Shown here piece after piece: positions 20,236-46,968 of a stretch of 64,000 nucleotides of DNA (position 1 is its first letter; each line of letters opens with the position of its first letter). A program made the position numbers and the translations under genes. The stretch comes from Macrostomum lignano (taxonomy: Eukaryota), in NCBI GenBank assembly GCA_002269645.1, contig NIVC01001457.1, positions 124,001-188,000 of the forward strand, in the 5' to 3' direction. The notes beneath the pieces are model-generated. The model was given only the letters and a program-made list of their open reading frames with translations. It ran no database searches and was not told where the DNA came from.

Positions 20236-20284
20236 TGCAAAATGATTTTTTTATTAAAAAACCTTAAAAAACACAAAATGCTAA

Positions 20285-22661: not shown

Positions 22662-22727
22662 ATGTCGGTTAAAGGAGTTCAGCTGTTTATCGACTGCCAG
22701 TGGTCTACTTGAGCATCAGAAGCTGCA

Positions 22728-25700
22728 ATGACACTGCTGGATTTGCGATCGCAGCTGCACCTGCTTCTGTTCCAGCTGCTCTTTAGTAAGTCTGCCTTGG
22801 AATTGGATCAAGATTTTCTTTATTCAAGCTAACTAATTTCGAAGAAATTTACTACTAGCGCTACAGGAAGAAACTTTGAAAGGACCAATATAAACACTTT
22901 TCAGTCACTGAACGATAGTTCTTTGGTCTTCAAGATATCGCTCGAAATTTCTACGCGTAGCTAATATCCTCAGTTAGACATGTAGCAAGATTTCTAATGT
23001 AGCATGCGGTTCAGACAATGAGAAGATAGCTCAGTCAATTTACAATCATCATCAAATTTTCTTCAAAATAGACTGGGCACTCAAGGTGAATCGATCGCTC
23101 GCATTTCAGCACTAACATTCGCTGAAGAGCTCGGCGCCATCAAAACGTCACACAGTTTCAACAGCTATTCTCTAAGGAATAACGGTTCTGTGATCGTGAG
23201 CCAGCACCTCAGCAGCAAGTTGATCAACACGAGCGTTCGATCCGACGCTGACTGCGTGCTGACGTGCCAGGAGAACTCCTGCACCGCCGCCATCGTCAAG
23301 GACGTCCCAACGGGTGGCTGCAAGTGCCAGGTGCTCGTCACCGACCCTTCGATGGGGCGGAGTCAGAGTCCGGAGAGCTTCATTGCCAGAGCGTTCCAGG
23401 CTGATGACGGCGTGAGAATCTGGACAGCTGAGAACTTTGAGAATCTAACGACGCCTAGGAAAATCGATTTCGCAATGACTTTTATTGGTGAGTTTGGCGC
23501 ATTGCGCAACTTAAGGAATAGAAAGCATGTGGAAATAAGCCTGACTTAATTGAGGCAGAACGGGACACCTAATTAACTTGTTTCTTGAAAAATTAAAACA
23601 CAATAATACGAACGTACTGATGGCATCACTTATTTGAAATCCAATTTCTAAGTACAATAGCTACTAAAACATTTCAGCCGCAGGCTCGGGGAGACTCGGC
23701 TCTGTTCAGTTTGTGGCAATAAACGACAGCGGCTGCTACCGAATCGCAGCTTACGGTGCCAGAGGCGGTCTCAACACAAGGTACACTCACCAAAAACCGG
23801 GCAAGGGTGCCTCAACTGCGGGTAACTTTTTTTCTGACCGCCGGCACTCGACTGGCCCTTGTGGTGGGTAAGGCTGGCGAGAGCTCGTCGGGACAGTACG
23901 ACGGGGCTGGCGGCGGCGGAGGCAGCTTCGTGTACACTTCCGACAAGGACCAGCAGCTGCTCATTGCAGCCGGGGGAGGCGGCGGCTCTACGTACAGAAA
24001 TGATGGCAAGTACCGATAGACATGTATAGTTGTCTGTGTTCTGCACACTGATGTACTACTACATACATTCCCATTATTTTGTCGTTAGGCACCATCGTGG
24101 GTTGCGCGAAGGGGCTTTAGCACGAAAAGGCTTTAGCACCAAGGGGCTTTAGCACCAAGGGGCTTTAGCACCAAGGGGCTTTAGCACCAAGGGGCTTTAG
24201 CACCAAGGGGCTTTAGCACCAAGGGGCTTTAGCACCAAGGGGCTTTAGCACCAAGGGGCTTTAGCACCAAGGGCTTTAGCACCAAGGGGCTTTAGCACCA
24301 AGGGGCTTTAGCACCAAGGGGCTTTAGCACCAAGGGGCTTTAGCACCAAGGGGCTTTAGCACCAAGGGGCTTTAGCACCAAGGGGCTTTAGCACCAAGGG
24401 GCTTTAGCACCAAGGGGCTTTAGCACCAAGGGGCTTTAGCACCAAGGGGCTTTAGCACCAAGGGGCTTTAGCACCAAGGGGCTTTAGCACCAAGGGGCTT
24501 TAGCACCAAGGGGCGCCAGCACCAAGGGGCTTTAGCACCAAGGGGCTTTAGCACCAAGGGGCTTTAGCACCAAGGGGCTTTAGCACCAAGGGGCTTTAGC
24601 ACCAAGGGGCTTTAGCACCAAAAGGCTTTAGCGCCAAGGGGCTTTAGCACCAAAAGGCTTTAGCGCCAAGGGGCTTTAGCACCAAGGGGCTTTAGCACCA
24701 AGGGGCTTTAGCACCAAGGGGCTTTAGCACCAAGGGGCTTTAGCACCAAGGGGCTTTAGCACCAAGGGGCTTTAGCACCAAGGGGCTTTAGCACCAAGGG
24801 GCTTTAGCACCAAGGGGCTTTAGCACCAAGGGGCTTTAGCACCAAGGGGCTTTAGCACCAAGGGGCTTTAGCACCAAGGGGCTTTAGCACCAAGGGGCTT
24901 TAGCACCAAGGGGCTTTAGCACCAAGGGGCTTTAGCACCAAGGGGCTTTAGCACCAAGGGGCTTTAGCACCAAGGGGCTTTAGCACCAAGGGGCTTTAGC
25001 ACCAAGGGGCTTTAGCACCAAGGGGCTTTAGCACCAAGGGGCTTTAGCACCAAGGGGCTTTAGCACCAAGGGGCTTTAGCACCAAGGGGCTTTAGCACCA
25101 AGGGGCTTTAGCACCAAGGGGCTTTAGCACCAAGGGGCGCCAGCACCAAGGGGCGCCAGCACCAAGGGGCGCCAGCACCAAGGGGCGCCAGCACCAAGGG
25201 GCGCCAGCACCAAGGGGCGCCAGCACCAAGGGGCGCCAGCACCAAGGGGCTTTAGCACCAAGGGGCTTTAGCACCAAGGGGCTTTAGCACCAAGGGGCTT
25301 TAGCACCAAGGGGCGCCAGCACCAAGGGGCTTTAGCACCAAGGGGCTTTAGCACCAAGGGGCTTTAGCACCAAGGGGCGCCAGCACCAAGGGGCTTTAGC
25401 ACCAAGGGGCGCCAGCACCAAGGGGCGCCAGCACCAAGGGGCGCCAGCACCAAGGGGCTTTAGCACCAAGGGGCTTTAGCACCAAGGGGCTTTAGCACCA
25501 AGGGGCTTTAGCACCAAGGGGCTTTAGCACCAAGGGGCTTTAGCACCAAGGGGCTTTAGCACCAAGGGGCTTTAGCACCAAGGGGCTTTAGCACCAAGGG
25601 GCTTTAGCACCAAAAGGCTTTAGCGCCAAGGGGCTTTAGCACCAAAAGGCTTTAGCGCCAAGGGGCTTTAGCACCAAAAGGCTTTAGCACCAAGTAGCTT

Positions 25701-26320
25701 TAGAAATTTACCTTTAGCCAACACCAATGAGGCTTGATTCTCATGACTCTGCCTCATGCTCAAGTATCCCAGCCGCTAACAATGTAGTTAATTAATATTC
25801 ATTTTCTGAAGGTATCGACGGCTCCGCTCGGACAAGCGGTGCAAGGGACACTTCAATGTCAACCAGCTATTCGGGATTCGGAGGCTCGAACGGCAGTCCA
25901 GGTACTGTAGCGACCTACTATTCGAGCTACCACTGCAAAGGCGGAGCTGGAGCCGGCTGGCTCGGGGACGCTGTCCTGAGTACGCGTTACAGATCGTGCG
26001 ACGGTCGGGGCGGGAAGAGCCGCGGAAGTGGCTGGTTGGGCGGAGACAGCAGCAGCGACGGCGACGGTGGCTTCGGAGGCGGCGGCGGAGGCGGCAGGGG
26101 ATACTCATACAGGTACTCGTACTCCTACTACCGCAGATATTACGGTTCGGCCGGAGGCGGCGGCGGCTACAGCGGAGGCGCGGCCGGTGCGAGCGGTAGC
26201 GGCGGCGGTGGTGGCGGCTCCGTCTGTTTCGGCGCTCAGTGCGTCACAATGGGAGGTGCGAACTCTTGGGCTGATGGACGAGTGCTGGTGAACGGGTATT
26301 TCTTGTCAGGGTGCAAATAA
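22728..26320 (+). CDS. Gene A: secreted PAN/apple-like + ALK/LTK-like glycine-rich-domain protein (~423 aa if one frameshift is corrected)
   Basis: Exons 22728-22785, 23110-23487, 23678-24005 and 25812-26320, all phase 1. Signal peptide MTLLDLRSQLHLLLFQLLFTLTFA; CVLTCQENSC PAN-like Cys pattern; GRD motifs YRIAAYGARGG, LVVGKAG, GGGGGSFV, LIAAGGGGG, GFGGGGGG, GGGGGYSGG, DGRVLV. One extra T in the run at 23827-23833. Intron 3 is GC-AG. Confidence 0.8.
24110..25700. repeat. 16-bp minisatellite in intron 3 of gene A
   Basis: About 100 copies of TTAGCACCAAGGGGCT with a GGGCGCCAGC variant. Confidence 0.95.
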
Positions 26321-27565
26321 GGCAGGTGAGCGGGCAGATGTAGAGTACGATGAGTTAGGATGTGTAAAGTGGGGTGAGAAAGGAGATGTAGAGTGGGAGG
26401 GCGAGTCTATATTTTTCAGTGATAGTGCTTGGGTGTTTGAAATTCTCAAATTTTGCAATGGCCTCGTAATTGCAGTCGTAACTACAGTAAAGCTACAGAT
26501 ACTTATCCTTGATAGTGAAGTAAGTAACTAAGAAACGAAGTACAATTTTTTATTCGTTTTTAAACATCTTTTCAGTCAATTTTTATTCATACTACTGGCT
26601 ACAAAATCTCAATTTTTAACTCTAGATTTTTAACCTCTTTAAAATCTGAATATTTTGCTTTACTAGCCTTATTAAAATCGCAAAAACAAACCACTTCAAA
26701 AGATTAGTGTCCAACCAAAGACAGCCACTTCAAGATGAAAGTGTCCACTTTAAGAAATGGGTGTCCAATACATACTTGAGCTGTCCACTTCAATTCAAAG
26801 GGTGTCTATGTTAGACATGGGTGTCCACTTTAAGACAGGGGTGTCCACTTTAAGACAGGGGTGTCCACTTTAAGACAGGGGTGTCCACTTTAAGACAGGG
26901 GTGTCCACTTAAAGACAGGGTTGTCCACTTGAAACTGGGGTCGCCTACGCCGCAGATTTCATCACAGCGACGCAATATTTACCGGATCGCTTTGCAGTAA
27001 TATTAATCATTTGTTATTTACTTTGCCCACACAAAGAGTGTCGCACTCGCCTATGACCTGTTAATCGACCTGTTCTACAAGCAGCCAACAGGTAAAACTC
27101 CTGTAGGCGCATGCGAGCTCAGGCGATTAACTGAAACTGCGGCTGCATCGCTCGACCACCTGCGGAGTGACTCGCATTTTTTTCCACTGAACTGTTGGTG
27201 GTTTTTTTGTGCGGGTCACCTGCGGTTGGGTTATATGTACTTTTATCCTTTCTGCACTGATACTTGCTTGGATTGAGTTTTTCGAGTTGTTACAACTGAT
27301 GCACTTTTCAATTCAATAAAACAGACAAGTGCATATCCGCTCACACTAACTTAGATTTTTCCGCGAAAGAACGACTATTGAATTAATTTAGACTGAATAC
27401 TTGCTTACATAATCTACATGTATGTTACTGGTGGAATCGGGACAGTGTGGGGGGCGCAGGTTAGGCCAAAGGCGCGGCAGACCTGTAACCCGTTACAGTT
27501 AAGTTGCAGGGTCTTTGCTAGTTGCAAGCTAGTTGCAAGTTGCTCCTTGTCTTCGGTGTCTGCGC

Positions 27566-27771
27566 TGTAGCCAGGGGATGTAGCCAGGGGATGTAGCCAG
27601 GGGATGTAGCCAGGGGATGTAGCCAGGGGATGTAGCCAGGGGATGTAGCCAGGGGATGTAGCCAGGGGATGTAGCCAGGGGATGTAGCCAGGGGATGTAG
27701 CCAGGGGATGTAGCCAGGGGATGTAGCCAGGGGATGTAGCCAGGGGATGTAGCCAGGGGATGTAGCCAGGG
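27566..27771. repeat. 13-bp minisatellite
   Basis: About 16 copies of TGTAGCCAGGGGA. Confidence 0.95.
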
Positions 27772-28230
27772 TGTTTACTTACTGCCGTCGTGATGGGTGA
27801 GCATCTGACAGCAGCTGGCGACCAGGATGTTCATTGATTTGTTGCTGCACTCTGCCGCTCCGAAAAGCTTCCGAACAAAGGCCTACGACGGCCGAACTCA
27901 TCAAATAATTGAGCTCAAAAGTGGACTCATTCATTAATTTGCCAAAGAGTTTAATTTCAATGCGGTGTTTCGAAGTACAGCTTTGCCAGGCAGACTTGAG
28001 GGAAGCAGTACAAGCTGACATTCCAACAAACAAGCAACAGGAACAAAATTACCCTGTAAGGATCTTTAGACCTCAAGCGGTCAGCTTCACCAAGACTATC
28101 TAAACAGGAAAAATGCCTTCTGCGAATCAATCAATTGTGAATACCAATTACAATTCGTTACGTCAGAGTCGACGGAGACGCGTTGCAAAATTGCTTATTG
28201 CCAAAATTTCAATTTTATGTCTTACTTACT

Positions 28231-30114
28231 TATGTCGTACCTGTCCATTTCGGCGACAGGTCAATTCGGCGACAACCATTTCGGCGACAATTCTTAAATA
28301 GGATTTTAAATGTATTCTTATCTCATAGCAACAAAAAGTTTCAGAACTTACACAAATTTACAACCTTTGTTTAAATGTTGTTAAAACTAATTATAGTGTA
28401 AAACTTTACATTAAACTTTAAAAGCTTTGTTAAAACTATGTTAAAATTTTTAATGTAAAACTTAATCAATGCGTCGACAGTATAAAACCTGGACACTGAT
28501 GGACATTTAGACACCAAAAGTACGGTAAAACGATTGAATTACAATAAGAAATTAATGTTTTAAGAAACGACGAGAAAAAAGCTTGTAGAGGACTTTAAAC
28601 GTTAGTCCATTCGAATTACAATTCGTGTACAATGTTTACTCTTCCACAGAGGCATTCATGCCACTGCATGCAAGCAGCAACGCCTCAACAGTTTTGGTGC
28701 CGGCTTCGTACTCCGCCCAGAGGCGAAAGAAGGCCTCCTGCCTCGCACGCACTGCTGGCCTCATTTCCCGAATGTTGGCACCCAGCTGACCGACCAATGC
28801 TGTGTCAATCTCGACCAAGAGGGCCTCTTCGTGCAGCAGCTTTAGAAGCTGGTAGAACTGCACGTGGGCCCTCATTGCACGGCGCTGCAGCTTATTGTGC
28901 CATCCCTCCGTGTCGTTGTTCGTTCTAATCGATAACCGGAAGACTGAGAGTTCATGCACTCGCCAGTTAGAGTTGCAGATCCACGTGCCCTGGACATATT
29001 TGCAGAGCCTGTTGAGCTCATCGTCTGTGACCGTGCTTCTGAGTGTGTAAAATGCGTTTGCGATTCGGTTACCTGGCAGAAAAGGCAACGCCATGAGCTT
29101 GCCAAGGACAAGTGAGTCCTTGCCTTTGGTCGACCCGCCACGAACAATTTCGAATTGCACTACTATTCCCGGTTCATGCTGCTGCAGTGGAGGGGTACTT
29201 GGACCGGGACAGCAATTTGCCGTTGCTGCTCTGGCCAATGTTCGTGCTGATGTTCGTCAGGCTGGTGCTGCTCGTGCTCGTCAGGCTGGTGCTGCTCAGG
29301 CTGGTGCTGCTCGTGCTCGTCAGGCTGGTGCTGCTCAGGCTGGTGCTGCTCGTGCTCGTCAGGCTGGTGCTGCTCAGGCTGGTGCTGCTCGTGCTAGTCA
29401 GGCTGGTGCTGCTGTGAGCACAAGTTGCACAGCCAGTCGAAGCCATCTAGCTTGTTTAGCTGGTAGTACTCTTCCTGAGTAATGCCACTGTTGCAAGTTC
29501 GATGCTGCCATCTGTGACATCCGTCACACTCCAGCCCTTGCTGCCTTTTTCGAACTCTGACATCGCACACAACACAACTAGACATGATTGGCTGACTGAG
29601 AAGTCAGCATGACACCAAGTGATTGCTTTTATAGCACCTCTTTCTCCCCATTCTTTCCCCATTTTGCAAGCTACAACGTGCTTCATGTTCTTGTGATCTC
29701 CGATTGAGCAATACATGTAAGCAACCGACTATGAACAGCTGCAAGGCTTGCTTTGAATTGTGCATGATGAACTTTGAGAGTAGCACATTGTAGCGCGCTC
29801 TCGTATTTGCGCCATTATTCCACTCTGCCACATACGCTCGTACTATACCAATCAGATTGGATTTGGTTAGACGAGAGAGATGGAGTGGGTGAACTGATAT
29901 TCACTTGGGCAGAGCATGATGTACATGATGTACATGTGCATGACATTTGTGTACGTGTGCAGACAAAGGGATAGTGAAAATATCAATCAGATAATATAAT
30001 AAGGCAAGTCTGAAACTTAGGCATTCAATTCCTAAGAGTGTCCTGTTTTTCTATGAGATAAGAAAACATATTCAAAATCCTATTTAAGAATTGTCGCCGA
30101 CTACTGACTACTGA
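28231..30114 (-). mobile_element. Internally deleted Mutator-like (MULE) transposon with PHD finger, nested in X1
   Basis: TIR TCGGCGACAATTCTTAAATAGGA (about 28281) matches its complement at 30078-30100. TTACTTACT at 28222-28230 and 30115-30123; the empty site is seen at about 42051. C4HC3 PHD finger at 29394-29585. MULE C-terminal motifs LMALPFLP, YVQGTWI and RTNNDTEGWHNKL at 28636-29100. Confidence 0.85.
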
Positions 30115-32214: not shown

Positions 32215-33390
32215 GACTGCTCACCCCACCCTACACTCTCTGCTCACCCCCACCCTACGCTCCCTGCTTACCCCCACCCTACGCCTACGCTCCCTGCTCA
32301 CCTTCACCCTACGCTCCCTGCTTACCCCCACCCTACGCCTACGCTCCCTGCTCACCTTCACCCTACGCTCCCTGCTTACCCCCACCCTACGCCTACGCTC
32401 CCTGCTCACCTTCACCCTACGCTCCCTGCTTACCCCCACCCTACGCCTACGCTCCCTGCTCACCTTCACCCTACGCTCCCTGCTTACCCTACCCTACAGC
32501 TCCCTGCTCACCCCACCCTACGCTCCCTGCTCACCCCCACCCTACGCTCCCTGCTTACCCCACCCTACAGCTCCCTGCTCACTTCATTTTACAGCTCCCT
32601 GCTCACTCTATTTTACAGCTCCCTGCTCACCCCAACCTACAGCTCCCTGCTCACCCCACCCTACAGCTCCCTGTTCACCCCAACCCTACAGCTCCCTGCT
32701 CACCCCACCCTACAGCTCCCTGCTCACCCCAACCCTACAGCTCCCTGCTCACCCCATTTTACAGCTCCCTGCTCACCCCAACCTACAGCTCCCTGCTCGA
32801 CCCACCCTACAGCTCCCTGCTCACCCCACCCTACAGCTCCCTGCTCACCCCAACCCTACAGCTCCCTGCTCACCCCAACCCTACAGCTCCCTGCTCACCC
32901 CAACCTACAGCTCCCTGCTCACCCCAACCTACAGCTCCCTGCTCACCCCAACCCTACAGCTCCCTGCTCACCCCAACCTACAGCTCCCTGCTCACCCCAA
33001 CCCTACAGCTCCCTGCTCACCCCAGCCTACAGCTCCCTGCTCACCCCAGCCTACAGCTCCCTGCTCACCCCACCCTACAGCTCCCTGCTCACCCCAGCCT
33101 ACAGCTCCCTGCTCACCCCAAACTACATCTCTTAACTCAACACCACTCTACACCCGATTCCTTCCCTATCCAACATATCGCTGCTCATCCTACTCTAGAT
33201 CTGCTTCCTCAACCTTTTCTAGATCTGTCTGGTCACCCTACTCTAGATCTGCCTGCTCAACCTACTCTAGATCTGCTTGCTCAACCTACTCTATATCTGC
33301 TTGCTCAACCTACTCTATATCTGCTTGCTCAACCTACTCTAGATCTGCCTGCTCACCCTACTCTAGATCTGCCTACTCTCCCTACTCTAT
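32215..33390. repeat. ~24-bp C-rich minisatellite downstream of gene B
   Basis: CTCACCCCACCCTACAGCTCCCTG units, grading into CCTACTCTAGATCTG variants. Confidence 0.9.
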
Positions 33391-33396
33391 CACGAG

Positions 33397-36300
33397 CTAA
33401 GTGCACAGTGAACTGTCAGCTCTTGTGATGAGAACTTTTCCGTTGGGTTCGGTGTTGCCGCCATCCTGGCCAGCAGGGTTCTTGCCGTCTGCGTAGCTGC
33501 CACCGCCGCCGCCTGCACCACCTGAGCTTTCGCCGACCCCGCCGCAGCCACCTGTGTAGCCACCACCACCGCCGCCTCCACCTTGGTCACCACTATTTTC
33601 GCTCCACCACCACCTCCACCACCGTAACCGCCAAAGCCACTAGATTCAGAATCGCCACCAGTCCAGCTTCCCGAAGCACTTCTTCCTGCAGAACCTCCTT
33701 GACCGCTGCCACCTGAGGCACCTATGGCACCAGAAACTCCATCAGAGTTCCAACCGGCTCCACCTCCGCCAGACCTTCTCGCTGTCGGACCGTCCCCTCC
33801 GCTTCCTTCGGTGGAGCCGCTGCAGGAGCCACCTGTGCCATCTGTGCCATCGCTTCCCGTTTTCGAGCTACTGCCATCGCCTCCGCCTCCTCCGCCACCG
33901 GCTACAAGAAGCAGCTGCTTTGGGTTATTATTTATGTAAACAAAGGTGCCGCCGCCTCCACCTCCGCCTCCTGAGCCATCATTGCCAGGCTTTCCAATAA
34001 CAATCGTCAGCGTCTCCGATAGGGTAAAGTAGGCCTCTTTAAAAGCACCTTTGCCACCTGATGAGCTTGAACCGGATTTGCCACCTTTTGCACCGAATGC
34101 GGAGATTCGGTAGCAGGCGCTTCCTGCAGGCGGTGTAAAGGTCGAAAGCGTTCCTGTTTGACTGGCTGCTGCAGAACCGCTTGCTTCTGAAATAATTATT
34201 GCGATATTTGAGCAGATACATCAAATATAAGTGCATAAAGTTCATTACTTAGATGCAGGCTTTAAATTATTAACAATTACCAGAATTTTGAACTATTAAT
34301 TGTTTACTCACCAGTAAAAACCACGGGAGCATTCGTTGTAGCTTTAGGAGTTGTAGTAGTAGTAGTCTGAGTCGTAGTAGTAGTAGTCGGAGTCGTAGTA
34401 GTGGTAGTAGTCGGAGTCGTAGTAGTGGTAGTCGGAGTCGTAGTAGTGGTAGTCGGAGTCGTAGTAGTGGTAGTCGGAGTCGTAGTAGTGGTAGTCGGAG
34501 TCGTAGTAGTGGTAGTCGGAGTCGTAGTAGTGGTAGTCGGAGTCGTAGTTGTAGTAGTAGTAGTCGGAGTCGTAGTAGTGGTAGTCGGAGTCGTAGTTGT
34601 AGTAGTAGTAGTCGGAGTCGTAGTAGTGGTAGTCGGAGTCGTAGTTGTAGTAGTAGTAGTCGGAGTCGTAGTAGTGGTAGTCGGAGTCGTAGTAGTAGTA
34701 GTAGTCGGAGTCGTAGTAGTGGTAGTCGGAGTCGTAGTAGTGGTAGTAGTCGGAGTCGTAGTAGTAGTAGTAGTCGGAGTCGTAGTAGTGGTAGTCGGAG
34801 TCGTAGTAGTAGTAGTAGTCGGAGTCGTAGTAGTGGTAGTCGGAGTCGTAGTAGTGGTAGTAGTCGGAGTCGTAGTAGTGGTAGTCGGAGTCGTAGTAGT
34901 ACTCAGAGTCGGAGTAGTGGTAGTCGGAGTAGTAGTAGTAGTACTCGAAGTCGCAGCAGTGGTAGCCGAAGTCGCAGCAGTGGTAGCCGAAGTCGCAGCA
35001 GTGGTAGCCGAAGTCGCAGCAGTGGTAGCCGAAGTCGCAGCAGTGGTAGCCGAAGTCGCAGCAGTGGTAGCCGAAGTCGCAGCAGTGGTAGCCGAAGTCG
35101 CAGCAGTGGTAGTCGGAGTCGTAGTAGTGGTAGTCGGAGTAGTAGTAGTAGTACTCGAAGTCGCAGCAGTGGTAGCCGAAGTCGCAGCAGTGGTAGCCGA
35201 AGTCGCAGCAGTGGTAGCCGAAGTCGCAGCAGTGGTAGTCGGAGTCGTAGTAGTGGTAGTCGGAGTCGTAGTAGTAGTAGTAGTCGGAGTCGCAGCAGTG
35301 GTAGTCGGAGTCGTAGTAGTGGTAGTCGGAGTAGTAGTAGTAGTACTCGAAGTCGCAGCAGTGGTAGCCGAAGTCGCAGCAGTGGTAGCCGAAGTCGCAG
35401 CAGTGGTAGCCGAAGTCGCAGCAGTGGTAGCCGAAGTCGCAGCAGTGGTAGCCGAAGTCGCAGCAGTGGTAGCCGAAGTCGCAGCAGTGGTAGCCGAAGT
35501 CGCAGCAGTGGTAGCCGAAGTCGCAGCAGTGGTAGCCGAAGTCGCAGCAGTGGTAGTCGGAGTCGTAGTAGTGGTAGTCGGAGTCGTAGTAGTAGTAGTC
35601 GGAGTCGTAGTAGTAGTAGTAGTCGGAGTCGCAGCAGTGGTAGTCGGAGTCGTAGTAGTGGTAGCCGAAGTCGCAGCAGTGGTAGTCGGAGTCGTAGTAG
35701 TGGTAGCCGAAGTCGCAGCAGTGGTAGCCGAAGTCGCAGCAGTGGTAGCCGAAGTCGCAGCAGTGGTAGCCGAAGTCGCAGCAGTGGTAGTCGGAGTCGT
35801 AGTAGTGGTAGTCGGAGTCGTAGTAGTAGTAGTCGGAGTCGTAGTAGTAGTAGTAGTCGGAGTCGCAGCAGTGGTAGCCGAAGTCGCAGCAGTGGTAGCC
35901 GAAGTCGCAGCAGTGGTAGTCGGAGTCGTAGTAGTGGTAGTCGGAGTCGTAGTAGTAGTAGTAGTCGGAGTCGCAGCAGTGGTAGTCGGAGTCGTAGTAG
36001 TGGTAGTCGGAGTAGTAGTAGTAGTACTCGAAGTCGCAGCAGTGTTAGCCGAAGTCGCAGCAGTGGTAGCCGAAGTCGCAGCAGTGGTAGCCGAAGTCGC
36101 AGCAGTGGTAGCCGAAGTCGCAGCAGTGGTAGCCGAAGTCGCAGCAGTGGTAGCCGAAGTCGCAGCAGTGGTAGCCGAAGTCGCAGCAGTGGTAGCCGAA
36201 GTCGCAGCAGTGGTAGCCGAAGTCGCAGCAGTGGTAGTCGGAGTCGTAGTGGTGGTAGTCGGAGTCGTAGTGGTGGTAGTCGGAGTCGTAGTAGTGGTAG

Positions 36301-36748
36301 TCGGAGTCGTAGTAGTAGTAGTAGTCAGAGTCGCAGCAGTGGTAGCCGAAGTCGCCGCAGTTGCAGTCGACGTTGCACCAGTTGTGGTCGGAGCTGCAGT
36401 GCTCACCGAAGCATTCTCACAATCTGCTCTGTGTCGCAACACCTGCGTGTAGCAGACCGGTCCGCTACTGAGCTGCCAATAAAGCAGCAGGTCGCAGCTG
36501 CTTCCAAGAATGCACGATCGGTTGCTTGGCCAGAACTCATAGACTGAGCACAGGGTCGTGTTGCTGGCGCACTCGACAGCGCACACTCGAGAATCGACAA
36601 CCCCGACGATTTTGCGCTGCTGTCCGCCAGCTGCAGTCGCAGTCGCGGCATTGTAGCACAGGTCCGGCCTCTTGTCGAAGACAAAAGATATGCCATCGGC
36701 TAATGCAATCAGGACTGCCAAAGTTATGACAGCGTCGTGTGCTGACAT
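33397..36748 (-). CDS. Gene B: secreted PAN/apple + long Thr-rich mucin stalk + ALK/LTK-like glycine-rich domain (~1075 aa if one frameshift is corrected)
   Basis: Exons 36748-34312 and 34186-33397, with a 125-bp GT-AG phase 1 intron. Signal MSAHDAVITLAVLIALADG; CAVECASNTTLCSVYEFWPSNRSCIL; about 690 aa of T/A/S/P repeats; CYRISAFGAKGG...IVIGKPG...LVAGGGGG. Exon 2 is 1 nt shorter than in gene C (T-run at 33596-33599). Confidence 0.85.
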
Positions 36749-37316
36749 TCTAGGATGCTGTCAGCTGTCTGGGTAGATTGGTGGACGCTTCTGTTAGGAG
36801 ACTGGAAGAGTTTAATAGCTAAGAAAGTTGCTCAAGCAATTGCAACTCTAAAAAAGACTCAAGCAGTCACACGAGTTTTTCCTTTACTTTAAATTCCTGT
36901 TGGCTGGGCTCTAGCGGACTCTCCATGGTGGCAGTTATCGCCATGGAAACCAGCTCAAGACAGTAGATGTCAGCTCCGGTTGAGCGAGAAACTTTTCCCA
37001 TGCCATGTCTTTAGCATCTCTGAGTGTCTCTGCATCAATGCGATTAAACGCTACAAGCTCACTGAAGTGTGTAAGAAACAAATGGCAAGACCCGCTCGCT
37101 TATCAGCCATAGATAAGTTTTTTGCTTCTGTCGCTGCTGGCTTTAATGTGGTTGCTTAGCAATAAGAACTCTGCGAAGCAAAGGGAAGAGTCTTGGGAGA
37201 CCAATGATGAATAGGAAGTGTCGCGATAGGAATCGTCGCATTCTATAAATGTGTCAGTTAAAGGAGCTTAGCTGTTTATCGACTGCCTGTGGTCTACTGG
37301 AGCATCAGAAACTGAA

Positions 37317-39590: not shown

Positions 39591-40422
39591 CCCACTTAAA
39601 GGTAAAGGTGTCGACTTGAAGGCAGGGGTGTCCACTTAAAGACTGAAGTGTCCACTTAAAGACTGAAGTGTCCACTTAAAGACTGAAGTGTCCACTTAAA
39701 GACTGAAGTGTCCACTTAAAGACTGAAGTGTCCACTTGAAGACTGAAGTGTCCACTTAAAGACTGAAGTGTCCACTTAAAGACTGAAGTGTCCACTTAAA
39801 GACTGAAGTGTCCACTTGAAGACTGAAGTGTCCACTTAAAGACTGAAGTGTCCACTTAAAGACTGAAGTGTCCACTTAAAGACTGAAGTGTCCACTTAAA
39901 GACTGAAGTGTCCACTTAAAGACTGAAGTGTCCACTTAAAGACTGAAGTGTCCACTTAAAGACTGAAGTGTCCACTTAAAGACTGAAGTGTCCACTTAAA
40001 GACTGAAGTGTCCACTTAAAGACTGAAGTGTCCACTTAAAGACTGAAGTGTCCACTTAAAGACTGAAGTGTCCTCTTAAGGAAATGGGTGTCCAGGACAT
40101 GCTCCAACTGTCTACTGGCATGCGAGCTCAGGCGATTAACTGAAACGGTGGTCCCTGCGGAGTGACTCGCAATTTTTCCAGCAAACTGTCTTTGGTTTTT
40201 TGTGCGGGTCACCTGCGGTTGGGTTATATGTACTTTTATCCTTTCTGCTCTGACATTTTATAGACTTCGGTTTTCAAATTGCCATAATTGATGCACTTTT
40301 TAATTCAATAAAACAGACAAGCGCGTATCTGTGTACACCATCTTTGATAGTTTTTTGCGAAGTAACTTTCTACTAAAGCGAATGTGAGATGCATTTTTGT
40401 CTGTTATTGAATTCATTGAGAG

Positions 40423-40950: not shown

Positions 40951-41192
40951 CTGAATGTCACTCATTCAACTACTCACTCAAAGCTGATAGAGACCTTGTT
41001 ACTGTTGCCACACACCTCGATCCGCATCTTCTTTGCCGAGCCGCCCAGACCGACAGTGTGGTCTTCACTGCCAGTGCTAACCTGCGAATGGGCCGACGAC
41101 TCTGCTGCCGTTACGGAGCTCATGCTGACGGAAGTTGTGGCCACGGATTGCACTCCAGCGATGATTTCACTGTGGTGTTTTTGCTGAGTTAG
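40951..41192 (+). pseudogene. Degenerate PAN-like exon related to gene A exon 2
   Basis: HSFNYSLKADRDLVTVATHL versus HSFNSYSLRNNGSVIVSQHL in gene A; RPDRQCGLHCQ (shifted frame) versus RSDADCVLTCQ. A phase-1-compatible acceptor lies at 40949-40950. Confidence 0.4.
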
Positions 41193-44100
41193 CGAGATGC
41201 CAATGTACCGCTCAGTAGCGGAGCTTCTGTGACGGCTGTGACGTCCATACTTCCTTTAATTTGACACTAGTTCTGCCTGAAGATCATATCAAAAAAGTCT
41301 GTCCACACCACCCTCTGGGGACTCCCTCTCCTATTAATTCTGCATTTTGTAGGCGAATTTCACCCATAGACCAAGTTTGGAAGAAAACCATTCTTTCCGC
41401 TTCTGCGCCTCGGCCAAGGAACCAGCTCTCAACCGGGGAATTCGGGCCAGAGAAGAGAATAAACAGGAAGAACTTAAACAGGAAGAGCAGGGAAGAACCC
41501 GTTTCAGTTAAGTTGCAGGGTCTTGATAGTTGCTCCTTGACTTCGGTGTCTGCGCTGTAGCCAGGGGGCGTAGCTAGGGTGTTTACTTGGATGGGTTGTC
41601 ACAGCCGTTGTGATGGGTAAGCACCTGACCGGAGCTGGTGGCCAGGGTGTTCATTGAGTAGTTGCTGCACTCTGCGTTCCGAAAAGCTTCCGAACAAAGG
41701 CTTACGACGGCCGAACACATCAAATAATGGAACTCAGAAGTGGACTCATTTATTAATTTAACAGAGTTTCATTTCAAGACAGTGTTCCGAAGTACAGCTT
41801 TGCCAAAGAACCGACGAGCTTAAAAGGCAGACTTGAGGGAGGCAGAGCAAGCTGAAGATTCCAACAAACAAACAACAGGAACAAAGTACCTCAAGCAGTC
41901 AGAGGGCGTGTTCAGCTTCAACAAGACTATCTAAGCACGAAAGCCTTCTGAATCAATCAATTGTAAATACGAAGTACAATTTGTTACGTCAGAGTCGACC
42001 GAGACGCGTTGCGAAATTGCTTAATTATTGCCAAAATTTTAATTCTATGTCTTACTTACTACTGACAGTCCATAGAGTTCCATAGAGAATTAAATTAACT
42101 CAAGAAGTTAAGCCATAGACAATTCCATTTGGCATGCTATATGGAACGATGAACCAGCATAGAAGGAGCTTTGCAGACAACGAGACGCTTTCATTTTATT
42201 TCAGTTGATTGAGTTCAGCTAAAATGGCGCGAAAAAGAGCCGTCAACTTAAGCTCACAAAGTGGAGCCTGAGTAACTTATGTACACAAATGATACGTCAT
42301 TCTGCTCACAGTGCCATCAGAAATCTGGGTTTGTCAAAAAAGTGACAAAAATAGACTTGTCAACAATTTAGAGACTATTATGTCAACTTAAGCTCAAATG
42401 CAGAGTCTCTAATTATCCTTTTGCTTGTTCTCCCCTATCCCAAGTCCGATTTTCGTCGCTTATTTGCTCCACTTTATGAGCTCAAGTTGACAGGCACTTT
42501 CTGTACGTAATTGAAAGCGTATCGTCGCTGCCTTGCACCGTCCTGACTTTACGGTTTGCATGGCAGTTGCTTCGGAGTTCGGGCTGGTACATTCTGTCAT
42601 CCAGAGATGTGGCCAATTGCAATAAAGATTTAAGGACTTTTTAGACCACCTAGCGGCCGCCGTCACCAAAAAATGGACCCTAACCGAAACTGAGTAATTT
42701 TTTCGGATGGCCCAAATTTTTTCACCAAAACGTGACGATCCCAAAGAACCATTGTGCATACGCTCGTAGCACGACAAAAACTATACCATATTGTTCTTAA
42801 AAATTTTGTTCGATATTTCTAGATAGGCGTGTAAACTTTTCCTTTCTGCTTTATCAAAACTTTTTAATACTTGAAGTATCCTGTAGCCAGAGTTAGAATC
42901 GGCCAGCTTGCTCTCTGTGCCAGCTCTCAAGCCTTCCTGTAAGCACGTGAATAAGACGTGAGCACCATATTTTCTCACAGGCGGTTTTTTGCCGAAGTTC
43001 CAGGTATTCAGATGGTCACTCATCGCAACGGTTGCTGGTTTGTCGGAATGTCAGCTTGTTCTGCCTCCCTCAAGTCTGCCTGGTAAAAGCTTTACTTCGA
43101 TACACCGTCTTGAAATGAACCTCCGTTAAATTAATAAATGAGTCCATTTTTGAGCTCAATTATTTGATGAGTTCTGTTCGGCCGTCGTAGGCCTTTGTTC
43201 GGAAGCTTTTCGGAGCGCAGAGTGAAGCAACTAATCAATGAACACCCTGGTCGCCAGCTGCTGTCAGATGCTTACCCATCACAACTTCCGTGGCACCCCA
43301 TCCAAGTGCAAACCAAACACCGAAGCCAAGGAGCACCTTGCAACTAGCAAAGACTCTGCAAATTAACTGTAACGGGTTCGTTCCAGGTCTGCCGTGCCTT
43401 TGGCCTCAGCTGCGCCACCACACTGTCCTGATTTCACCAGTAAGATACATGTAGGCTCTAGGTAAGCAAGCATTCAGTCTAAATTAATTCAATAGCCGTA
43501 GAGCAGAGAAAGCGCAGTTCAATTTCGATTCAGTTAAAAGTTCCTTCGCAGAAAAATCTAAGTTAGTGTAAGTGGATATGCACTTGTCTGTTTTATTGAA
43601 TTGAAAAGTGCATCAGTTATAGCAATTTGAAAACCGAAGTCTAGAAAGTGTCAGTGCAGAAAGGATAAAAGTACATATAACCCACCCGCAGGTGACCCGC
43701 ACAAAAAAACCACCAACAGTTCAGTGGAAAAAAATGCGAGTCACTCCGCAGGTGGTCGAGCGGTGCAGCCGCAGTTTCAGTTAATCGTCTGTGCTTGCAT
43801 GCGCCTACAGGAGTTTCACCTGTTGGCTGCTTGTAGAACAGGTCGATCGGTGATGGACGAGTGCAGCACTCTTTGTGGGCGAATGAAATGACAAATAATA
43901 TTCCTAGCTAATAATATTAGCTAGTAAATAATAGTGAATATTAGTGGTGGAATCTGCGGCAGTGGCAATCTCAGTTTCAAGTGGACACCCCTGTCTTTAA
44001 GTGGACACCCCTGTCTTGAAGTGGACACCCGGCCCTTTCTTTAAGTGGACACCCAGGTCTTTAAGTGAGCACCCCAGTCTTTAAGTGGACACCCTGTATT

Positions 44101-44714
44101 CAAGAGGACACCCCTGTCTTAAAATGGATACCCTTGTCTTTAAGTGGACATCCTGTCTTTAATTGGACACCCCTGTCTTCAACTGGACATCCCTGTCTTT
44201 AACTGGACATCCCATCTTTAAGTGGACACCACTGTCTTCAAGTGGACACCCCTGTCTTCAACTGGACATCCCTATCTTTAAGTGGACACCACTGTCTTCA
44301 AGTGGACACTCCTGTCTTAAAATGGACACCCCTGTCTTGAAATGGACACCCCTTTCATCAAGTGGACACCCCTTTCTTTAAGTGGACACCCGTCTTTAAG
44401 TGGACACCCCAGTCCCCTCCACTCCTTAAGTGGTCTACAGTTTTAGCAATTAAGGTGAGGATAGAAGGAAAAAAATGTTTTGATTTTCAAGAGGCTGCAA
44501 AAAAATAACAGAAAAAAATGGCATACTTCGTATTTTTGACAGTAGAATGAATTTTAATTGACAGAATTAAAACTAAATTAAAATTAGAATTATTTGACAG
44601 AGCATAGGTAAATATCAAAGAAATTGTAGTTTTGCAATTTACTACGTAGGATTGCAGAGACAGCAAAAATTGATAGTTTTAAACACGCAAGCACTTCAAC
44701 TGACACACATAGAC

Positions 44715-45350
44715 TGCTCACCCCCACCCTACAGCTCCCTGCTCACCCCACACTACAGCTCCCTGCTCACCCCACACTACAGCTCCCTGCTCATCCCACC
44801 CTACAGCTCCCTGCTCACCCCACACTACAGCTCCCTGCTCACCCCACACTACAGCTCCCTGCTCACCCCACACTACAGCTCCCTGCTCACCCCACACTAC
44901 AGCTCCCTGCTCACCCCACACTACAGCTCCCTGCTCACCCCCACCCTACAGCTCCCTGCTCACCCCACCCTACAGCTCCCTGCTCACCCCACACTACAGC
45001 TCCCTGCTCACCCCACCCTACAGCTCCCTGCTCACCCCACCCTACGGCTCCCTGCTCACCCCACCCTACGGCTCCCTGCTCACCCCAAACTACATCTCCT
45101 AACTCAACACCACTCTACACCCGGTTCCAACATATCGCTGCTCATCCTACTCTAGATCTGCCTCCTCAACCTTTTCTAGATCTGTCTGGTCACCCTACCT
45201 TAGCTGTGCCTGCTCAACCTACTCTAGATCTGCATGCTCAACCTACTCTATATCTGCCTGCTCACCCTACTCTATATCTGCCTGCTCACCCTACTCTATA
45301 TCTGCCTGCTCACCCTACTCTATATCTGCATGCTCAACCTACTCTATCAC
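44715..45350. repeat. ~24-bp C-rich minisatellite downstream of gene C
   Basis: Same family as 32215-33390. Confidence 0.9.
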
Positions 45351-45353
45351 GAA

Positions 45354-46968
45354 CTAAGTGCACAGTGAACTGTCAGCTCTTGTGATGAGAACTTTTCCGT
45401 TTGATTCGGTGTTGCCGCCATCCTGGCCAGCAGGGTTCTTGCCAGCTGCGTAGCTGCCACCGCCGCCGCCGCCTGCAGCATTTGTTTTTGCACCGACGCC
45501 ACCGCAACCACCTGTGTAGCCACCACCACCGCCGCCTCCACCTTTATTAGCACCACTTGTCGCTCCACCGCCACCGCCACCACCGTAACCACCAAAGCCG
45601 ACGCTATTATGCCCAGAATTGCCACCTGTCCAGTGTCCTAAAGCACTTCTCCCTGCATAACCTCCTTTATCGTCTTCAGTTGCGGCACCAGCATCACCAG
45701 GAGAGTTCCAACCGGCTCCACCTGCGCCAGACCTTGCCGCTGGCGGACCGGCCCCTCCGCTTCCTTCGGTTGAGCCGCTGCAGGAGCCACCTGGGCCATC
45801 TGTGCCATCGCTTCCGGTATTCGAACTGCTGCCATCGCCTCCGCCTCCTCCGCCACCGGCCACAAGAAGCAGCTGCTTTGGGTTATTATTTATGTACACA
45901 AAGGTGCCGCCGCCTCCGCCTCCGCCTCCTCCGCCATCATTGCCAGGCTTTCCAATAACAATCGTCAGCGTCTCCGATAGGGTAAAGTAGGCCTCTTTAA
46001 AAGCACCTTTGCCACCTGATGCGCTTGAACCGGAATCGCCACCTTTTGCACCGAATGCGGAGATTCGGTAGCAGGCGTTTGCTTCAGGCGGTGTAAAGGT
46101 CGAAAGCGTTCCTGTTTGACTGGCTGCTGCAGAACCGCTTGCTTCTGAAAGAATTTTTGCGATATTCGAGCAGATACATTAAATATAAGTGCATAGAGTG
46201 CATTACTTAGATGCTGTCGTTAAGTAATAATCAGACATTTACATTATTAGTTGTCTACTCACCAGTAAAAGCCACGGGAGCATTCGTTGTAGTAGTAGTA
46301 GTAGTAGTGGTAGTCGGAGTCGTAGTAGTAGTAGTCGGAGTCGTAGTAGTGGTAGTCGGAGTCGTAGTAGTGGTAGTCGGAGTCGTAGTAGTAGTAGTCG
46401 GAGTCGTAGTAGTGGTGGTCGGAGTCGTAGTAGTGGTGGTCGGAGTCGTAGTAGTGGTAGTCGGAGTCGTAGTGGTGGTAGTCGGAGTCGTAGTAGTGGT
46501 GGTCGGAGTCGTAGTAGTAGTAGTCGTAGTCGTAGTAGTGGTAGTCAGCGTCGCCGCAGTGGTAGCCGGAGTCGCCGCAGTTGCAGTCGACGTTGCACCA
46601 GTTGTGGTCGGAGCTGCAGTGCTCAGCGAAGCATTCTCACAATCTGCCCTGTGTCGCAGCACCTGCGTGTAGCAGACCGGTCCGCTACTCAGCTGCCAAT
46701 AAAGCAGCAGGTCGCAGCTGCTTCCAAGAATGCACGATCGGTTGCTTGGCCAGAACTCATAGACTGAGCACAGAGTCGTGTTACTGGCGCACTCGACAGC
46801 GCACACTCGAGAATCGACAACCCCGACGATTTTGCGCTGCTGTCCGCCAGCTGCAGTCGCAGTCGCGGCATTGTAGCACAGGTCGGGCCTCTTGTCGAAG
46901 ACAAAAGATATGCCATCGGCAAATGCAATCAGGACTGCCAAAGTTATGACAACGTCGTGTACTGGCCT
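45354..46968 (-). CDS. Gene C: paralog of gene B with a short mucin stalk; start codon altered
   Basis: Exons 46968-46263 and 46144-45354 (118-bp intron), an uninterrupted 498-codon frame. The ATG of B is AGG here (46968-46966), with an in-frame TGA five codons upstream. Confidence 0.75.

What the first reader, a model, noticed from the sequence alone, without database searches (positions are those of the whole stretch)
22728..46968. Cluster of secreted PAN-(mucin)-ALK/LTK-like glycine-rich-domain proteins with no receptor part
Seen: three genes (A, B, C) and a remnant share signal peptide + PAN/apple-like Cys module + GRD and stop without a TM or kinase domain. B and C insert a Thr-rich stalk between the modules; A does not. 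Known: in ALK/LTK the glycine-rich domain forms a polyglycine-II bundle in the ligand-binding region, and PAN modules mediate protein or glycan binding. Inferred: a possibly undescribed family of bifunctional secreted proteins (mucus, adhesive or defence components, or soluble ALK-ligand decoys). This is the best candidate for a novel system in this window.
Basis: partly seen in the sequence, partly recalled or inferred. Interest (0 to 1): 0.75.

Follow-up and report, generated by a model that had tools for sequence, protein, structure and literature searches.

The report
Secreted flatworm PAN–mucin–glycine-rich-domain gene cluster
Three neighbouring, unannotated genes of the flatworm Macrostomum lignano encode secreted proteins whose C-terminal domain is a kinase-less relative of the ALK/LTK ligand-binding domain; this large family is recorded in databases but never studied, and each copy here has one defect in its reading frame as assembled.

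Summary
The window is Macrostomum lignano (Mlig_3_7, NIVC01001457.1:124001-188000). Three genes carrying a glycine-rich domain (GRD) are real. A lies on the + strand (four exons, 22728-26320). B (33397-36748) and C (45354-46968) lie on the - strand and are a tandem duplicate pair.

The GRD is a true homologue of the ALK/LTK TNF-like plus glycine-rich domain: profile against PDB E=3e-27, AlphaFold pLDDT 86, Foldseek TM 0.60-0.67. B and C carry a borderline but credible PAN/apple module and a 21-nt VNTR Thr/Pro mucin stalk (690 and 113 aa). A's N-terminal module shares only a Cys motif with PAN.

All three stop at the family's usual C-terminus. There is no TM segment and no kinase motif anywhere in the 64 kb. 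No fourth "remnant" exists.

As assembled, no copy is intact: A has a +1 frameshift in a T7 run, B a 1-bp deletion in the GRD, and C has AGG in place of the ATG. None is annotated.

The architecture is not new to databases. M. lignano PAA57358.1 is SP-PAN-GRD, corals have PAN_1+GRD proteins, and the GRD profile finds 14,626 protein clusters, mostly bacterial or phage. No member has been characterised. Most likely these are extracellular binding proteins, not receptors or ALK-ligand decoys.

The parts
22654..22664 (+). TATA-like box (CTATAAATATG) about 70 nt upstream of gene A's ATG
   Evidence: Sequence reading. Consensus match only.
22728..22785 (+). Gene A exon 1: ATG and the first 19 aa of the signal peptide (MTLLDLRSQLHLLLFQLLF). 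Donor A|GTAAGT, phase 1.
   Evidence: Joined to exon 2 it gives the h-region LHLLLFQLLFTLTFA|EE.
23110..23487 (+). Gene A exon 2: end of the signal peptide plus a flatworm-specific 4-Cys module (C-x3-C-x4-C-x12-C-x-L). Donor ATT G|GTGAGT, at the same position and phase as in B and C.
   Evidence: PAN not supported statistically. Homologous modules occur in M. lignano P0121, P0122 and P0133.
23678..24005 (+). Gene A exon 3: N-terminal third of the GRD. It holds the T7 run 23827-23833, whose extra T shifts the frame and gives a stop after 209 aa as assembled.
   Evidence: Profile hits fall in two frames.
24006..25811 (+). Gene A intron 3 (1806 nt) with a GC-AG boundary (G|GCAAGT ... TTTTCTGAAG|GT). 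It is almost filled by a 16-nt microsatellite of about 100 copies (24109-25703).
   Evidence: This model restores the conserved ...YRNDGIDGSART... alignment with homologues.
25812..26320 (+). Gene A exon 4: C-terminal two thirds of the GRD, with the stop codon at 26318-26320.
   Evidence: The concatenated A GRD passes Pfam PF12810 (28.2 bits against a gathering score of 24.5).
36692..36748 (-). Gene B start codon and signal peptide (MSAHDAVITLAVLIALADG).
   Evidence: Kyte-Doolittle 2.36 over 19 aa.
36404..36691 (-). Gene B PAN/apple module.
   Evidence: PAN_1 21.4 bits, equal to the gathering score, E=2.2e-4. Profile hits factor XI apple, MIC4 and SML-2. The low-confidence model matches only PAN folds.
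34334..36403 (-). Gene B mucin-like stalk: 690 aa with 66% Thr, 19% Ala, 8% Pro, 7% Ser, built from a 21-nt VNTR of about 94 copies.
34187..34311 (-). Gene B intron (125 nt, GT-AG, phase 1).
33397..34186 (-). Gene B exon 2: the whole GRD. A 1-bp deletion relative to C lies at 33598/33599 (GCGA-AAAT). In the homologous frame the stop is at 33397-33399. In the frame as assembled the stop is at 33390-33392.
46263..46968 (-). Gene C exon 1: signal-peptide homologue without an ATG (AGG at 46966-46968, in-frame TGA 15 nt upstream), PAN module (46624-46911) and a 113-aa Thr/Pro stalk (46285-46623).
46145..46262 (-). Gene C intron (118 nt, GT-AG, phase 1).
45354..46144 (-). Gene C exon 2: intact GRD (263 aa, 33% Gly), with the stop codon at 45354-45356.
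   Evidence: AlphaFold pLDDT 85.9, pTM 0.87. Foldseek to LTK/ALK TM 0.60-0.67.
32217..33389 (.). 24-nt minisatellites immediately 3' of gene B's stop. The same arrays lie 3' of gene C at 44714-45347. They are part of the duplicated block, not coding.
   Evidence: The 417-aa '+' ORF at 32175-33428 is a translation of this repeat.

Best explanation
The locus is a tandem array of three unannotated members of a Macrostomum gene family for secreted, non-receptor proteins. A is an old paralogue. B and C are a recent tandem duplicate pair, 83% identical in the GRD and about 89% identical in DNA.

Each protein is built as follows:
- a signal peptide;
- one small disulfide module, which is PAN/apple in B and C and a related-looking 4-Cys module in A;
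- in B and C only, a VNTR Thr/Pro-rich stalk that is presumably O-glycosylated and differs greatly in length between the two;
- a stand-alone TNF-like plus polyglycine-II glycine-rich domain.

This GRD is homologous to the ligand-binding domain of ALK/LTK. It is closer still to the GRDs of coral, bacterial-surface and phage tail-fibre proteins.

Inferred mechanism: these are extracellular binding proteins. The PAN module attaches to a glycan or matrix partner. The mucin stalk acts as a stiff spacer. The rigid GRD presents variable loops as a recognition head, as it does at phage fibre tips and in ALK. The proteins would sit in mucus or on the surface, serving adhesion or microbe recognition. 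They are not receptors and not fragments of one.

Shown: the gene structures, the domains and the absence of TM and kinase parts. Inferred: secretion, glycosylation and the binding role. In this assembly each copy has one lesion, so whether this particular locus is functional is open.
For: - Organism and locus.
- Gene models.
- GRD homology: Pfam PF12810 passes for A. Profile A3 hits ALK/LTK structures at E=3e-27 over 269 of 291 positions. The AlphaFold model has pLDDT 85.9. The top 19 Foldseek hits are ALK/LTK, TM 0.60-0.67. Phage proteins reach TM 0.71 and 32% identity.
- PAN module of B and C.
- Stalk.
- No TM segment and no kinase motifs in 64 kb.
- A and B converge on each other, and each gene stops at the C-terminus shared by the whole family, including transcript-based PAA57358.1 and the coral proteins.
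- Coding constraint since the B/C duplication: the PAN module has 0 nonsynonymous against about 6 synonymous changes. Three of the four GRD indels are multiples of 3. The exons are more conserved than the intron (84%) and the upstream region (88%). Changes cluster in one loop region, residues 146-185, with dN/dS about 1.3.
- Binding role of this fold in phage Pam3 gp24 and in ALK: PMC9608196.
Against: - As assembled, none of the three has an intact ORF.
- No protein identical or close to A, B or C exists among 5.8 billion database proteins, although the annotation of this genome is transcript-based. Expression is therefore unproven.
- The overall GRD dN/dS between B and C is about 0.8, which also fits relaxed constraint.
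- Signal peptides were judged by eye and by hydropathy only.
- No ligand, tissue or phenotype is known for any stand-alone GRD protein (PMC4859500).
- The PAN structural model has low confidence (pLDDT 58).
Confidence: 0.55

Rival explanations
1. The three copies are decaying or silent pseudogenes: redundant paralogues in a neopolyploid, repeat-rich genome. Intact family members elsewhere, such as PAA57358.1, carry the function.
For: There is one disabling lesion per copy. A also has a GC rather than GT donor. Four substitutions cluster at C's lost start and all change the residue. None is annotated in a transcript-based annotation and none has a near-identical database protein. GRD dN/dS is about 0.8. 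The density of 1-bp indels is similar to that between homeologous non-coding DNA.
Against: The PAN module of B and C has no nonsynonymous change. Three of the four GRD indels are in frame, and the exons are more conserved than the intron and flanks. Both frameshifts lie in homopolymer runs of a PacBio-derived assembly, which was polished with Pilon, where near-identical homeologues hinder polishing. Long Thr-repeat genes are hard to assemble from RNA-seq.
Confidence: 0.35
2. They are bulk structural or material proteins of mucus, adhesive or egg-shell type. On this view the polyglycine-II lattice serves as a material, as in springtail antifreeze proteins, rather than as a specific recognition head.
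For: The proteins have a very long mucin stalk, 28-35% Gly and a conserved penultimate C-terminal Cys that could cross-link molecules. PGII bundles have non-binding roles in other proteins (PMC12227593).
Against: The domain is the complete TNF-like plus GRD fold used for recognition in ALK/LTK and in phage fibres. Substitutions between B and C concentrate in loops, not in the Gly lattice.
Confidence: 0.15
3. They are soluble decoys or modulators of the ligands of the worm's own ALK receptor.
For: They share a fold with the ALK/LTK ligand-binding domain.
Against: They are only 24-28% identical to ALK/LTK, against 32-46% to stand-alone GRDs of corals, bacteria and phages. The stand-alone family has 14,626 clusters, mostly in organisms without ALK. 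There are several divergent paralogues with different N-modules and linkers. No ALK or ligand gene lies in the window.
Confidence: 0.03
4. They are 5' parts of receptor genes whose TM and kinase exons lie further away, or they are bacterial or phage contamination.
For: UniProt names some relatives 'receptor protein-tyrosine kinase' or 'Protein kinase domain-containing'. Many homologues are bacterial or phage.
Against: Those names are not borne out. P0133, named 'Protein kinase domain-containing', has no kinase domain in Pfam, and the same 'receptor protein-tyrosine kinase' name is attached to phage proteins. The stop codons fall at the family's conserved C-terminus. A and B are convergent, and B's start lies downstream of C. 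No kinase motif occurs in 64 kb. The genes have spliceosomal introns, signal peptides and a PAN module, and are flanked by M. lignano genes on a 286-kb contig.
Confidence: 0.03

Closest known systems
ALK/LTK extracellular TG domain (TNF-like plus glycine-rich, Pfam PF12810; PDB 7NX0, 7N00, 7LS0, 7LIR)
   Same: The domain is homologous. Profile E=3e-27 covers almost the whole domain. It has the same fold, TM 0.60-0.67, and the same Gly-run motifs: GGGGGxF, AGGGGG, GAGW, GGFGGGGG, GGGGGYxGG, GGGGGS.
   Different: There is no EGF-like module, TM helix or kinase, and no MAM or LDLa domains. Identity is only 24-28%. The partners are an N-terminal PAN module and a mucin stalk. The ligand is unknown.
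Stand-alone GRD proteins: M. lignano PAA57358.1 (A0A267E764, 'Apple domain-containing protein') and coral PAN_1+GRD proteins (Stylophora, Porites, Dendronephthya, Desmophyllum)
   Same: They share the signal peptide, PAN, GRD order and the same C-terminal end. PAA57358.1 has its GRD in a single exon, as B and C do, and is 45% identical to them.
   Different: None of these has the Thr-rich VNTR stalk. The PAN sequence of B and C has no detectable relative in the protein database. All are uncharacterised.
Phage tail-fibre or adhesin tips with a TNF-like plus Gly-rich domain (cyanophage Pam3 gp24; polyglycine domain of Salmonella phage S16 gp38)
   Same: These are the best structural matches in the viral library (TM up to 0.71, 32% identity). 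The fold is used there as a distal receptor-recognition head (PMC9608196).
   Different: The phage proteins are trimeric fibre parts with helical shafts and chaperones. The proteins here belong to a eukaryotic secretory pathway and have PAN and mucin parts. Their oligomeric state is unknown.
PAN/apple modules (HGF N domain, factor XI/prekallikrein apple, Toxoplasma MIC4, Sarcocystis SML-2 lectin)
   Same: The Cys spacing C-x3-C-x6-C-x11-C-x-L is shared. The Pfam PAN_1 hit sits at the gathering score. The profile hits factor XI apple at E=5e-7. All the top fold hits are PAN modules.
   Different: Sequence identity is very low, the structural model is poor (pLDDT 58), and the binding specificity is unknown. 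Gene A's module cannot be assigned to this family.
Secreted mucins with VNTR Pro/Thr/Ser domains
   Same: The stalk is 66-78% Thr with 8-11% Pro, built from 7-aa tandem repeats whose copy number differs strongly between B and C.
   Different: There are no von Willebrand D or cystine-knot polymerisation domains. The globular ends are PAN and GRD. Glycosylation was not tested.

Membership tests
ALK_LTK_GRD (Pfam PF12810) domain family | Significant match to the family profile | tested here: met
   A's concatenated GRD scores 28.2 bits against a gathering score of 24.5. B and C give no direct Pfam hit, as do several clear relatives. However, a profile containing C hits ALK/LTK GRD chains at E=3e-27.
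ALK_LTK_GRD (Pfam PF12810) domain family | TNF-like beta-sandwich carrying a glycine-rich (polyglycine-II) subdomain | tested here: met
   The AlphaFold model of C's GRD has pLDDT 85.9 and pTM 0.87, with beta strands at both ends and a long stretch that is neither helix nor strand in between. The top 21 PDB matches are all ALK/LTK/SCD-2 GRDs. PGII geometry itself was not measured.
ALK/LTK receptor tyrosine kinases | Transmembrane helix after the ectodomain | tested here: not met
   The maximum 19-aa Kyte-Doolittle value after the signal peptide is 1.2 or less. The stop codon directly follows the last GRD strand.
ALK/LTK receptor tyrosine kinases | Cytoplasmic tyrosine kinase domain | tested here: not met
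   No HRDxxxxN or DFG motif occurs in any of the six frames of the 64-kb window. Motifs split by introns could be missed.
ALK/LTK receptor tyrosine kinases | EGF-like module after the GRD, and MAM/LDLa modules before it | tested here: not met
   Pfam scans of all parts show only PAN_1 and PF12810.
PAN/apple module (Pfam PF00024), genes B and C | Profile match and conserved Cys pattern | tested here: met
   PAN_1 scores 21.4 bits, equal to the gathering score, E=2.2e-4, for the mature module, and 20.6-20.9 bits in longer fragments. The four core Cys are invariant in the alignment with coral PAN_1 modules. The profile hits factor XI apple at E=5e-7. This is a borderline pass.
PAN/apple module (Pfam PF00024), genes B and C | PAN fold (central helix packed on a beta sheet, disulfide-locked) | tested here: inconclusive
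   The model has pLDDT 58.4. Even so, about 40 of the top Foldseek hits are PAN/apple/MANEC modules, E 0.02-0.5.
PAN/apple module, gene A | Profile match | tested here: not met
   There is no Pfam hit and no PAN structure in the PDB profile search. hhalign to the B-type PAN alignment gives probability 1.6%. Only the motif C-x3-C-x4-C-x12-C-x-L is shared.
Mucin-type PTS domain | Tandem repeats rich in Thr/Ser/Pro | tested here: met
Mucin-type PTS domain | Dense O-glycosylation | not testable with these tools
   This needs biochemistry.
Secreted proteins | Cleavable N-terminal signal peptide | tested here: inconclusive
   Hydrophobic N-termini with small residues at -3 and -1 are present in A and B. 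No signal-peptide predictor was available. C lacks an initiator codon.

The most novel reading that the evidence does not exclude
Macrostomum, and independently corals, use kinase-less ALK-type glycine-rich domains as the variable recognition heads of a family of secreted PAN-anchored, mucin-stalked lectin-like proteins. This family would diversify by tandem duplication, VNTR length change and loop substitution. It would amount to an animal surface or mucus recognition system built on the same fold that phages use to recognise hosts, and a living example of the stand-alone module from which the ALK ectodomain was assembled.
Probability: 0.15. Interest if true: 0.65.

Novelty: new variant of a known kind. 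Interest (0 to 1): 0.38.

Why it matters
The ALK/LTK glycine-rich domain has been studied only as part of a human oncogenic receptor. Its relatives number in the thousands (14,626 clusters), yet no animal stand-alone member has a known function. An experimentally tractable flatworm (RNAi, in situ hybridisation, transgenesis) with several such genes could give the first functional handle on the module. That includes an annotated intact paralogue and this tandem cluster with a mucin-stalk variant. It could also shed light on how the ALK ectodomain arose. For this particular locus the value is limited until the three reading-frame lesions and expression are checked.

Tried and rejected
- Fourth copy or 'remnant'. 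tblastn and profile HMMs for the GRD, the PAN module and the A-type module against all six-frame ORF pieces with filters off found nothing. The Gly-rich hits at 32.2-32.6 kb are translations of a 24-nt minisatellite. The (ACT)n-like tract at 6240-7390 shifts frame repeatedly and is not coding.
- Kinase or TM exons: none found.
- Relatives of the B/C PAN module: the word-indexed search found none.
- PAN status of A's module: Pfam, PDB profile and hhalign were all negative.
- Rescue of C's missing start by the spliced leader. The M. lignano SL ends in ATG (PMC8629364). By my reading, joining it at the AG sites near the lost start gives out-of-frame or quickly terminated products.
- Checking the lesions in homeologous contigs. 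NIVC01001194.1 is collinear at about 99% identity, but the fetchable flank ends about 1.1 kb before gene A, and NIVC01000591.1 diverges earlier.
- Using indel density between homeologues to judge assembly error: not discriminating.
- Literature on Macrostomum or stand-alone GRD function: nothing found. One fungal genome paper notes PF12810 proteins with 'no hint of a function'.

Full report
**Origin of the window**

The 375-aa ORF at 12837-13961 is, residue for residue, an NCBI protein of Macrostomum lignano. It lies on contig NIVC01001457.1 (286,212 bp) of assembly GCA_002269645.1 (Mlig_3_7). The window corresponds to positions 124001-188000 of that contig. Two homeologous or allelic copies of the neighbourhood exist on other contigs. 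Mlig_3_7 is a PacBio/Canu assembly polished with Pilon, and its annotation is transcript-based (PMC5730564).

**What is in the sequence**

tblastn and six-frame profile scans find exactly three regions encoding a glycine-rich domain (GRD), and no fourth copy.

Gene A lies on the + strand and has four exons:
- Exon 1, 22728-22785: the ATG and the start of the signal peptide.
- Exon 2, 23110-23487: the rest of the signal peptide (MTLLDLRSQLHLLLFQLLFTLTFA|EE) and a 4-Cys module.
- Exon 3, 23678-24005: the N-terminal part of the GRD.
- Exon 4, 25812-26320: the C-terminal part of the GRD and the stop codon.

Intron 3 is 1.8 kb, has a GC-AG boundary, and is filled by a 16-nt microsatellite of about 100 copies. 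A TATA-like box lies about 70 nt upstream of the ATG.

Genes B and C lie on the - strand and have two exons each, separated by a 118-125-nt phase-1 intron at the same position as A's second intron.
- B: exon 1 at 34312-36748, exon 2 at 33397-34186.
- C: exon 1 at 46263-46968, exon 2 at 45354-46144.

Exon 1 encodes the signal peptide (MSAHDAVITLAVLIALADG in B), a Cys-rich module and a Thr-rich stalk. Exon 2 encodes the whole GRD.

B and C belong to a tandem segmental duplication (31088-37008 against 43556-47243, about 89% DNA identity). The duplicated block includes the 24-nt minisatellites that follow both stop codons.

**The stalk**

The stalk is a 21-nt (7-aa) VNTR. B has about 94 copies, giving 690 aa with 66% Thr, 19% Ala, 8% Pro and 7% Ser. 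C has about 14 copies, giving 113 aa with 78% Thr and 11% Pro. A has no stalk.

**The glycine-rich domain**

- Pfam's PF12810 model passes its gathering score only for A (28.2 against 24.5 bits). It misses B and C. It also misses or under-scores obvious relatives.
- A profile of 38 family members with C's GRD as first sequence hits the solved ALK and LTK ligand-binding domains at E=3e-27 to 5e-25, over 269 of 291 positions. It hits the C. elegans SCD-2 GRD at 3e-18.
- An AlphaFold model of C's GRD is confident (pLDDT 85.9, pTM 0.87). It has beta strands at both ends and a long Gly-rich middle that is neither helix nor strand.
- Its best 21 PDB matches are all ALK/LTK/SCD-2 GRDs, with TM 0.60-0.67 and 24-28% identity to human ALK/LTK.
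- Against predicted viral structures the best matches are phage proteins (TM up to 0.71, 32% identity), many from cyanophages. Cyanophage Pam3 gp24 is known to use a TNF-like plus Gly-rich domain at the tail-fibre tip for host recognition, and that domain resembles the nematode ALK GRD (PMC9608196).
- The three GRDs have 28-35% Gly, five or six runs of four or more Gly, and even numbers of Cys.

**The N-terminal modules**

For B and C:
- The mature module scores PAN_1 at 21.4 bits, exactly the gathering score (E=2.2e-4). Longer fragments score 20.6-20.9 bits.
- Its four core Cys align with those of coral PAN_1 modules that score up to E=4e-9.
- The joint profile hits factor XI apple domains (E=5e-7), Toxoplasma MIC4 and the Sarcocystis lectin SML-2.
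- The structural model is poor (pLDDT 58). Nevertheless about 40 of its top Foldseek matches are PAN/apple/MANEC modules.

I accept PAN for B and C as a borderline pass.

For A, the module is shared with M. lignano proteins P0121, P0122 and P0133. It has no Pfam or PDB support as PAN, and its hhalign match to the B-type alignment is weak. Only the motif C-x3-C-x4-C-x12-C-x-L is shared.

**No receptor part**

- After the signal peptides there is no hydrophobic stretch.
- No kinase catalytic motif occurs in any frame of the 64 kb.
- A and B converge on each other, and C's 3' side runs into B's 5' end.
- All three stop a few residues after the last beta strand. That is where the coral, bacterial and M. 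lignano relatives end too. These include PAA57358.1, whose CDS comes from transcript evidence.
- UniProt names such as 'receptor protein-tyrosine kinase' (P0001) or 'Protein kinase domain-containing' (P0133) are not backed by a kinase domain. P0133 has none in Pfam, and the same label sits on phage proteins.

**Lesions**

As assembled, none of the three reading frames is intact.
- A has seven T at 23827-23833 where six would keep the frame. As it stands, translation stops after 209 aa.
- B lacks one base relative to C at 33598/33599 (GCGA-AAAT). The last ~70 residues of the GRD are therefore replaced by an out-of-frame tail of similar length.
- In C the codon homologous to B's ATG is AGG (46966-46968). 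An in-frame TGA lies 15 nt upstream, and there is no other in-frame ATG before the PAN module.

The M. lignano spliced leader ends in ATG (PMC8629364). By my reading, joining it at the nearby AG sites gives out-of-frame or terminated products.

No protein close to A, B or C exists in the 5.8-billion-protein collection. No gene is called at A's 5' end in the NCBI record.

Evidence pointing the other way:
- Between B and C the PAN module has no nonsynonymous but about six synonymous differences.
- Three of the four GRD indels are multiples of three.
- The exons are more conserved than the intron (84%) and the upstream region (88%).
- Substitutions cluster in one loop region (residues 146-185, dN/dS about 1.3), while the termini are conserved.

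Both frameshifts lie in homopolymers. Near-identical homeologues could have hindered polishing. The comparison of homeologous non-coding DNA shows 0.6-1.6 one-base homopolymer indels per kb among mostly substitutions, which does not decide the matter. I could not reach the homeologous copies of A, B and C.

**How common is this**

- The GRD profile finds 14,626 50%-identity cluster representatives at E<=1e-3. Of these, 2,176 reach E<=1e-30, including giant proteins with up to ten GRDs.
- Among listed relatives the GRD is joined to T9SS sorting tails, pilin and PEP-CTERM signals, PKD, fn3, EGF, C-type lectin and cadherin domains. In four anthozoan proteins it is joined to PAN.
- M. lignano itself has at least six database entries of the family. 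These include PAA57358.1 (A0A267E764, 'Apple domain-containing protein', 373 aa): signal peptide, PAN and GRD, no stalk, three exons with the GRD in one, and 45% identical to B and C.
- Another paralogue (P0001) has an acidic Asp/Tyr-rich linker in place of the Thr stalk.
- I found no paper on any of these proteins. A 2016 fungal genome paper states that PF12810 gives 'no hint of a function'.

**Interpretation**

The safest statement is structural. This is a tandem cluster of kinase-less, secretory GRD genes of a lineage-expanded family, and B and C are a mucin-stalked variant.

The functional proposal is inferred from three things: what PAN modules and this GRD fold do elsewhere, the mucin architecture, and the loop-focused divergence between B and C. 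On that basis I propose extracellular binding proteins in which PAN acts as an anchor, the stalk as a spacer and the GRD as a recognition head.

The decoy idea is unlikely because the domains are much closer to stand-alone GRDs than to ALK. The receptor-fragment and contamination ideas are contradicted by gene structure and context.

The main rival is that this locus is non-functional (about one chance in three). Reads and RNA-seq can settle that.

**Verdict**

This is a new variant (unannotated members carrying a mucin stalk) of a recorded but uncharacterised kind. Interest is moderate (0.38).

Noticed in passing
window 24109-25703: A 16-nt microsatellite (AAGGGGCTTTAGCACC, about 100 copies, 95% matches) fills most of gene A's third intron. 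That intron has a GC-AG boundary (donor G|GCAAGT at 24006).
   Followed up: partly
window 32217-33389 and 44714-45347: 24-nt minisatellites start within about 10 nt of the stop codons of B and C. Their translations give long spurious ORFs (for example 417 aa at 32175-33428, '+') and Gly-rich frames that mimic GRD hits.
   Followed up: yes
window 26741-26941, 31518-31856, 39592-40079, 43979-44414: A 20-nt satellite family (AGTGGACACCCCTGTCTTTG and variants) recurs four times around the cluster, in both orientations.
   Followed up: no
window 6240-7390: A long (ACT/ATT)n-like tract is 68-76% similar in DNA to the Thr-stalk VNTR of B and C. It reads as poly-Thr, poly-Leu or poly-Tyr depending on frame, with repeated frame changes, so it is not a mucin gene.
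   Followed up: yes
window 28636-29238 (-): A 200-aa ORF with no Pfam hit lies between genes A and B. From memory, its ...TNNDTEGWHNKL... stretch resembles MULE-type transposase fragments. This was not tested.
   Followed up: partly
window 12837-13964 (+): An annotated single-exon gene encodes a 375-aa protein with a signal peptide and a C-terminal TM segment and no known domain. It is present in three near-identical copies in the assembly (BOX15_Mlig025998g1 and g3, plus this one).
   Followed up: partly
P0001, P0133 and BFVD entries: UniProt names GRD-only flatworm and phage proteins 'receptor protein-tyrosine kinase' or 'Protein kinase domain-containing'. P0133 has no kinase domain in Pfam, so the names appear to be rule-based transfers from the GRD.
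   Followed up: partly
C-termini of A, B, C and M. lignano paralogues: The flatworm family members share a Cys at the start of the GRD (xCYRI) and a penultimate C-terminal Cys (..LCT*..GCK*..TCA*..KCN*). The coral and bacterial relatives lack both. This could be a clade-specific disulfide stapling the two ends, or an intermolecular link.
   Followed up: no
L004 (NIVC01001194.1) against window 9873-21621: A homeologous contig is collinear at 96.5-99% identity up to the end of the fetched flank, about 1.1 kb short of gene A. A second contig (NIVC01000591.1) loses collinearity after window position ~15.7 kb.
   Followed up: partly
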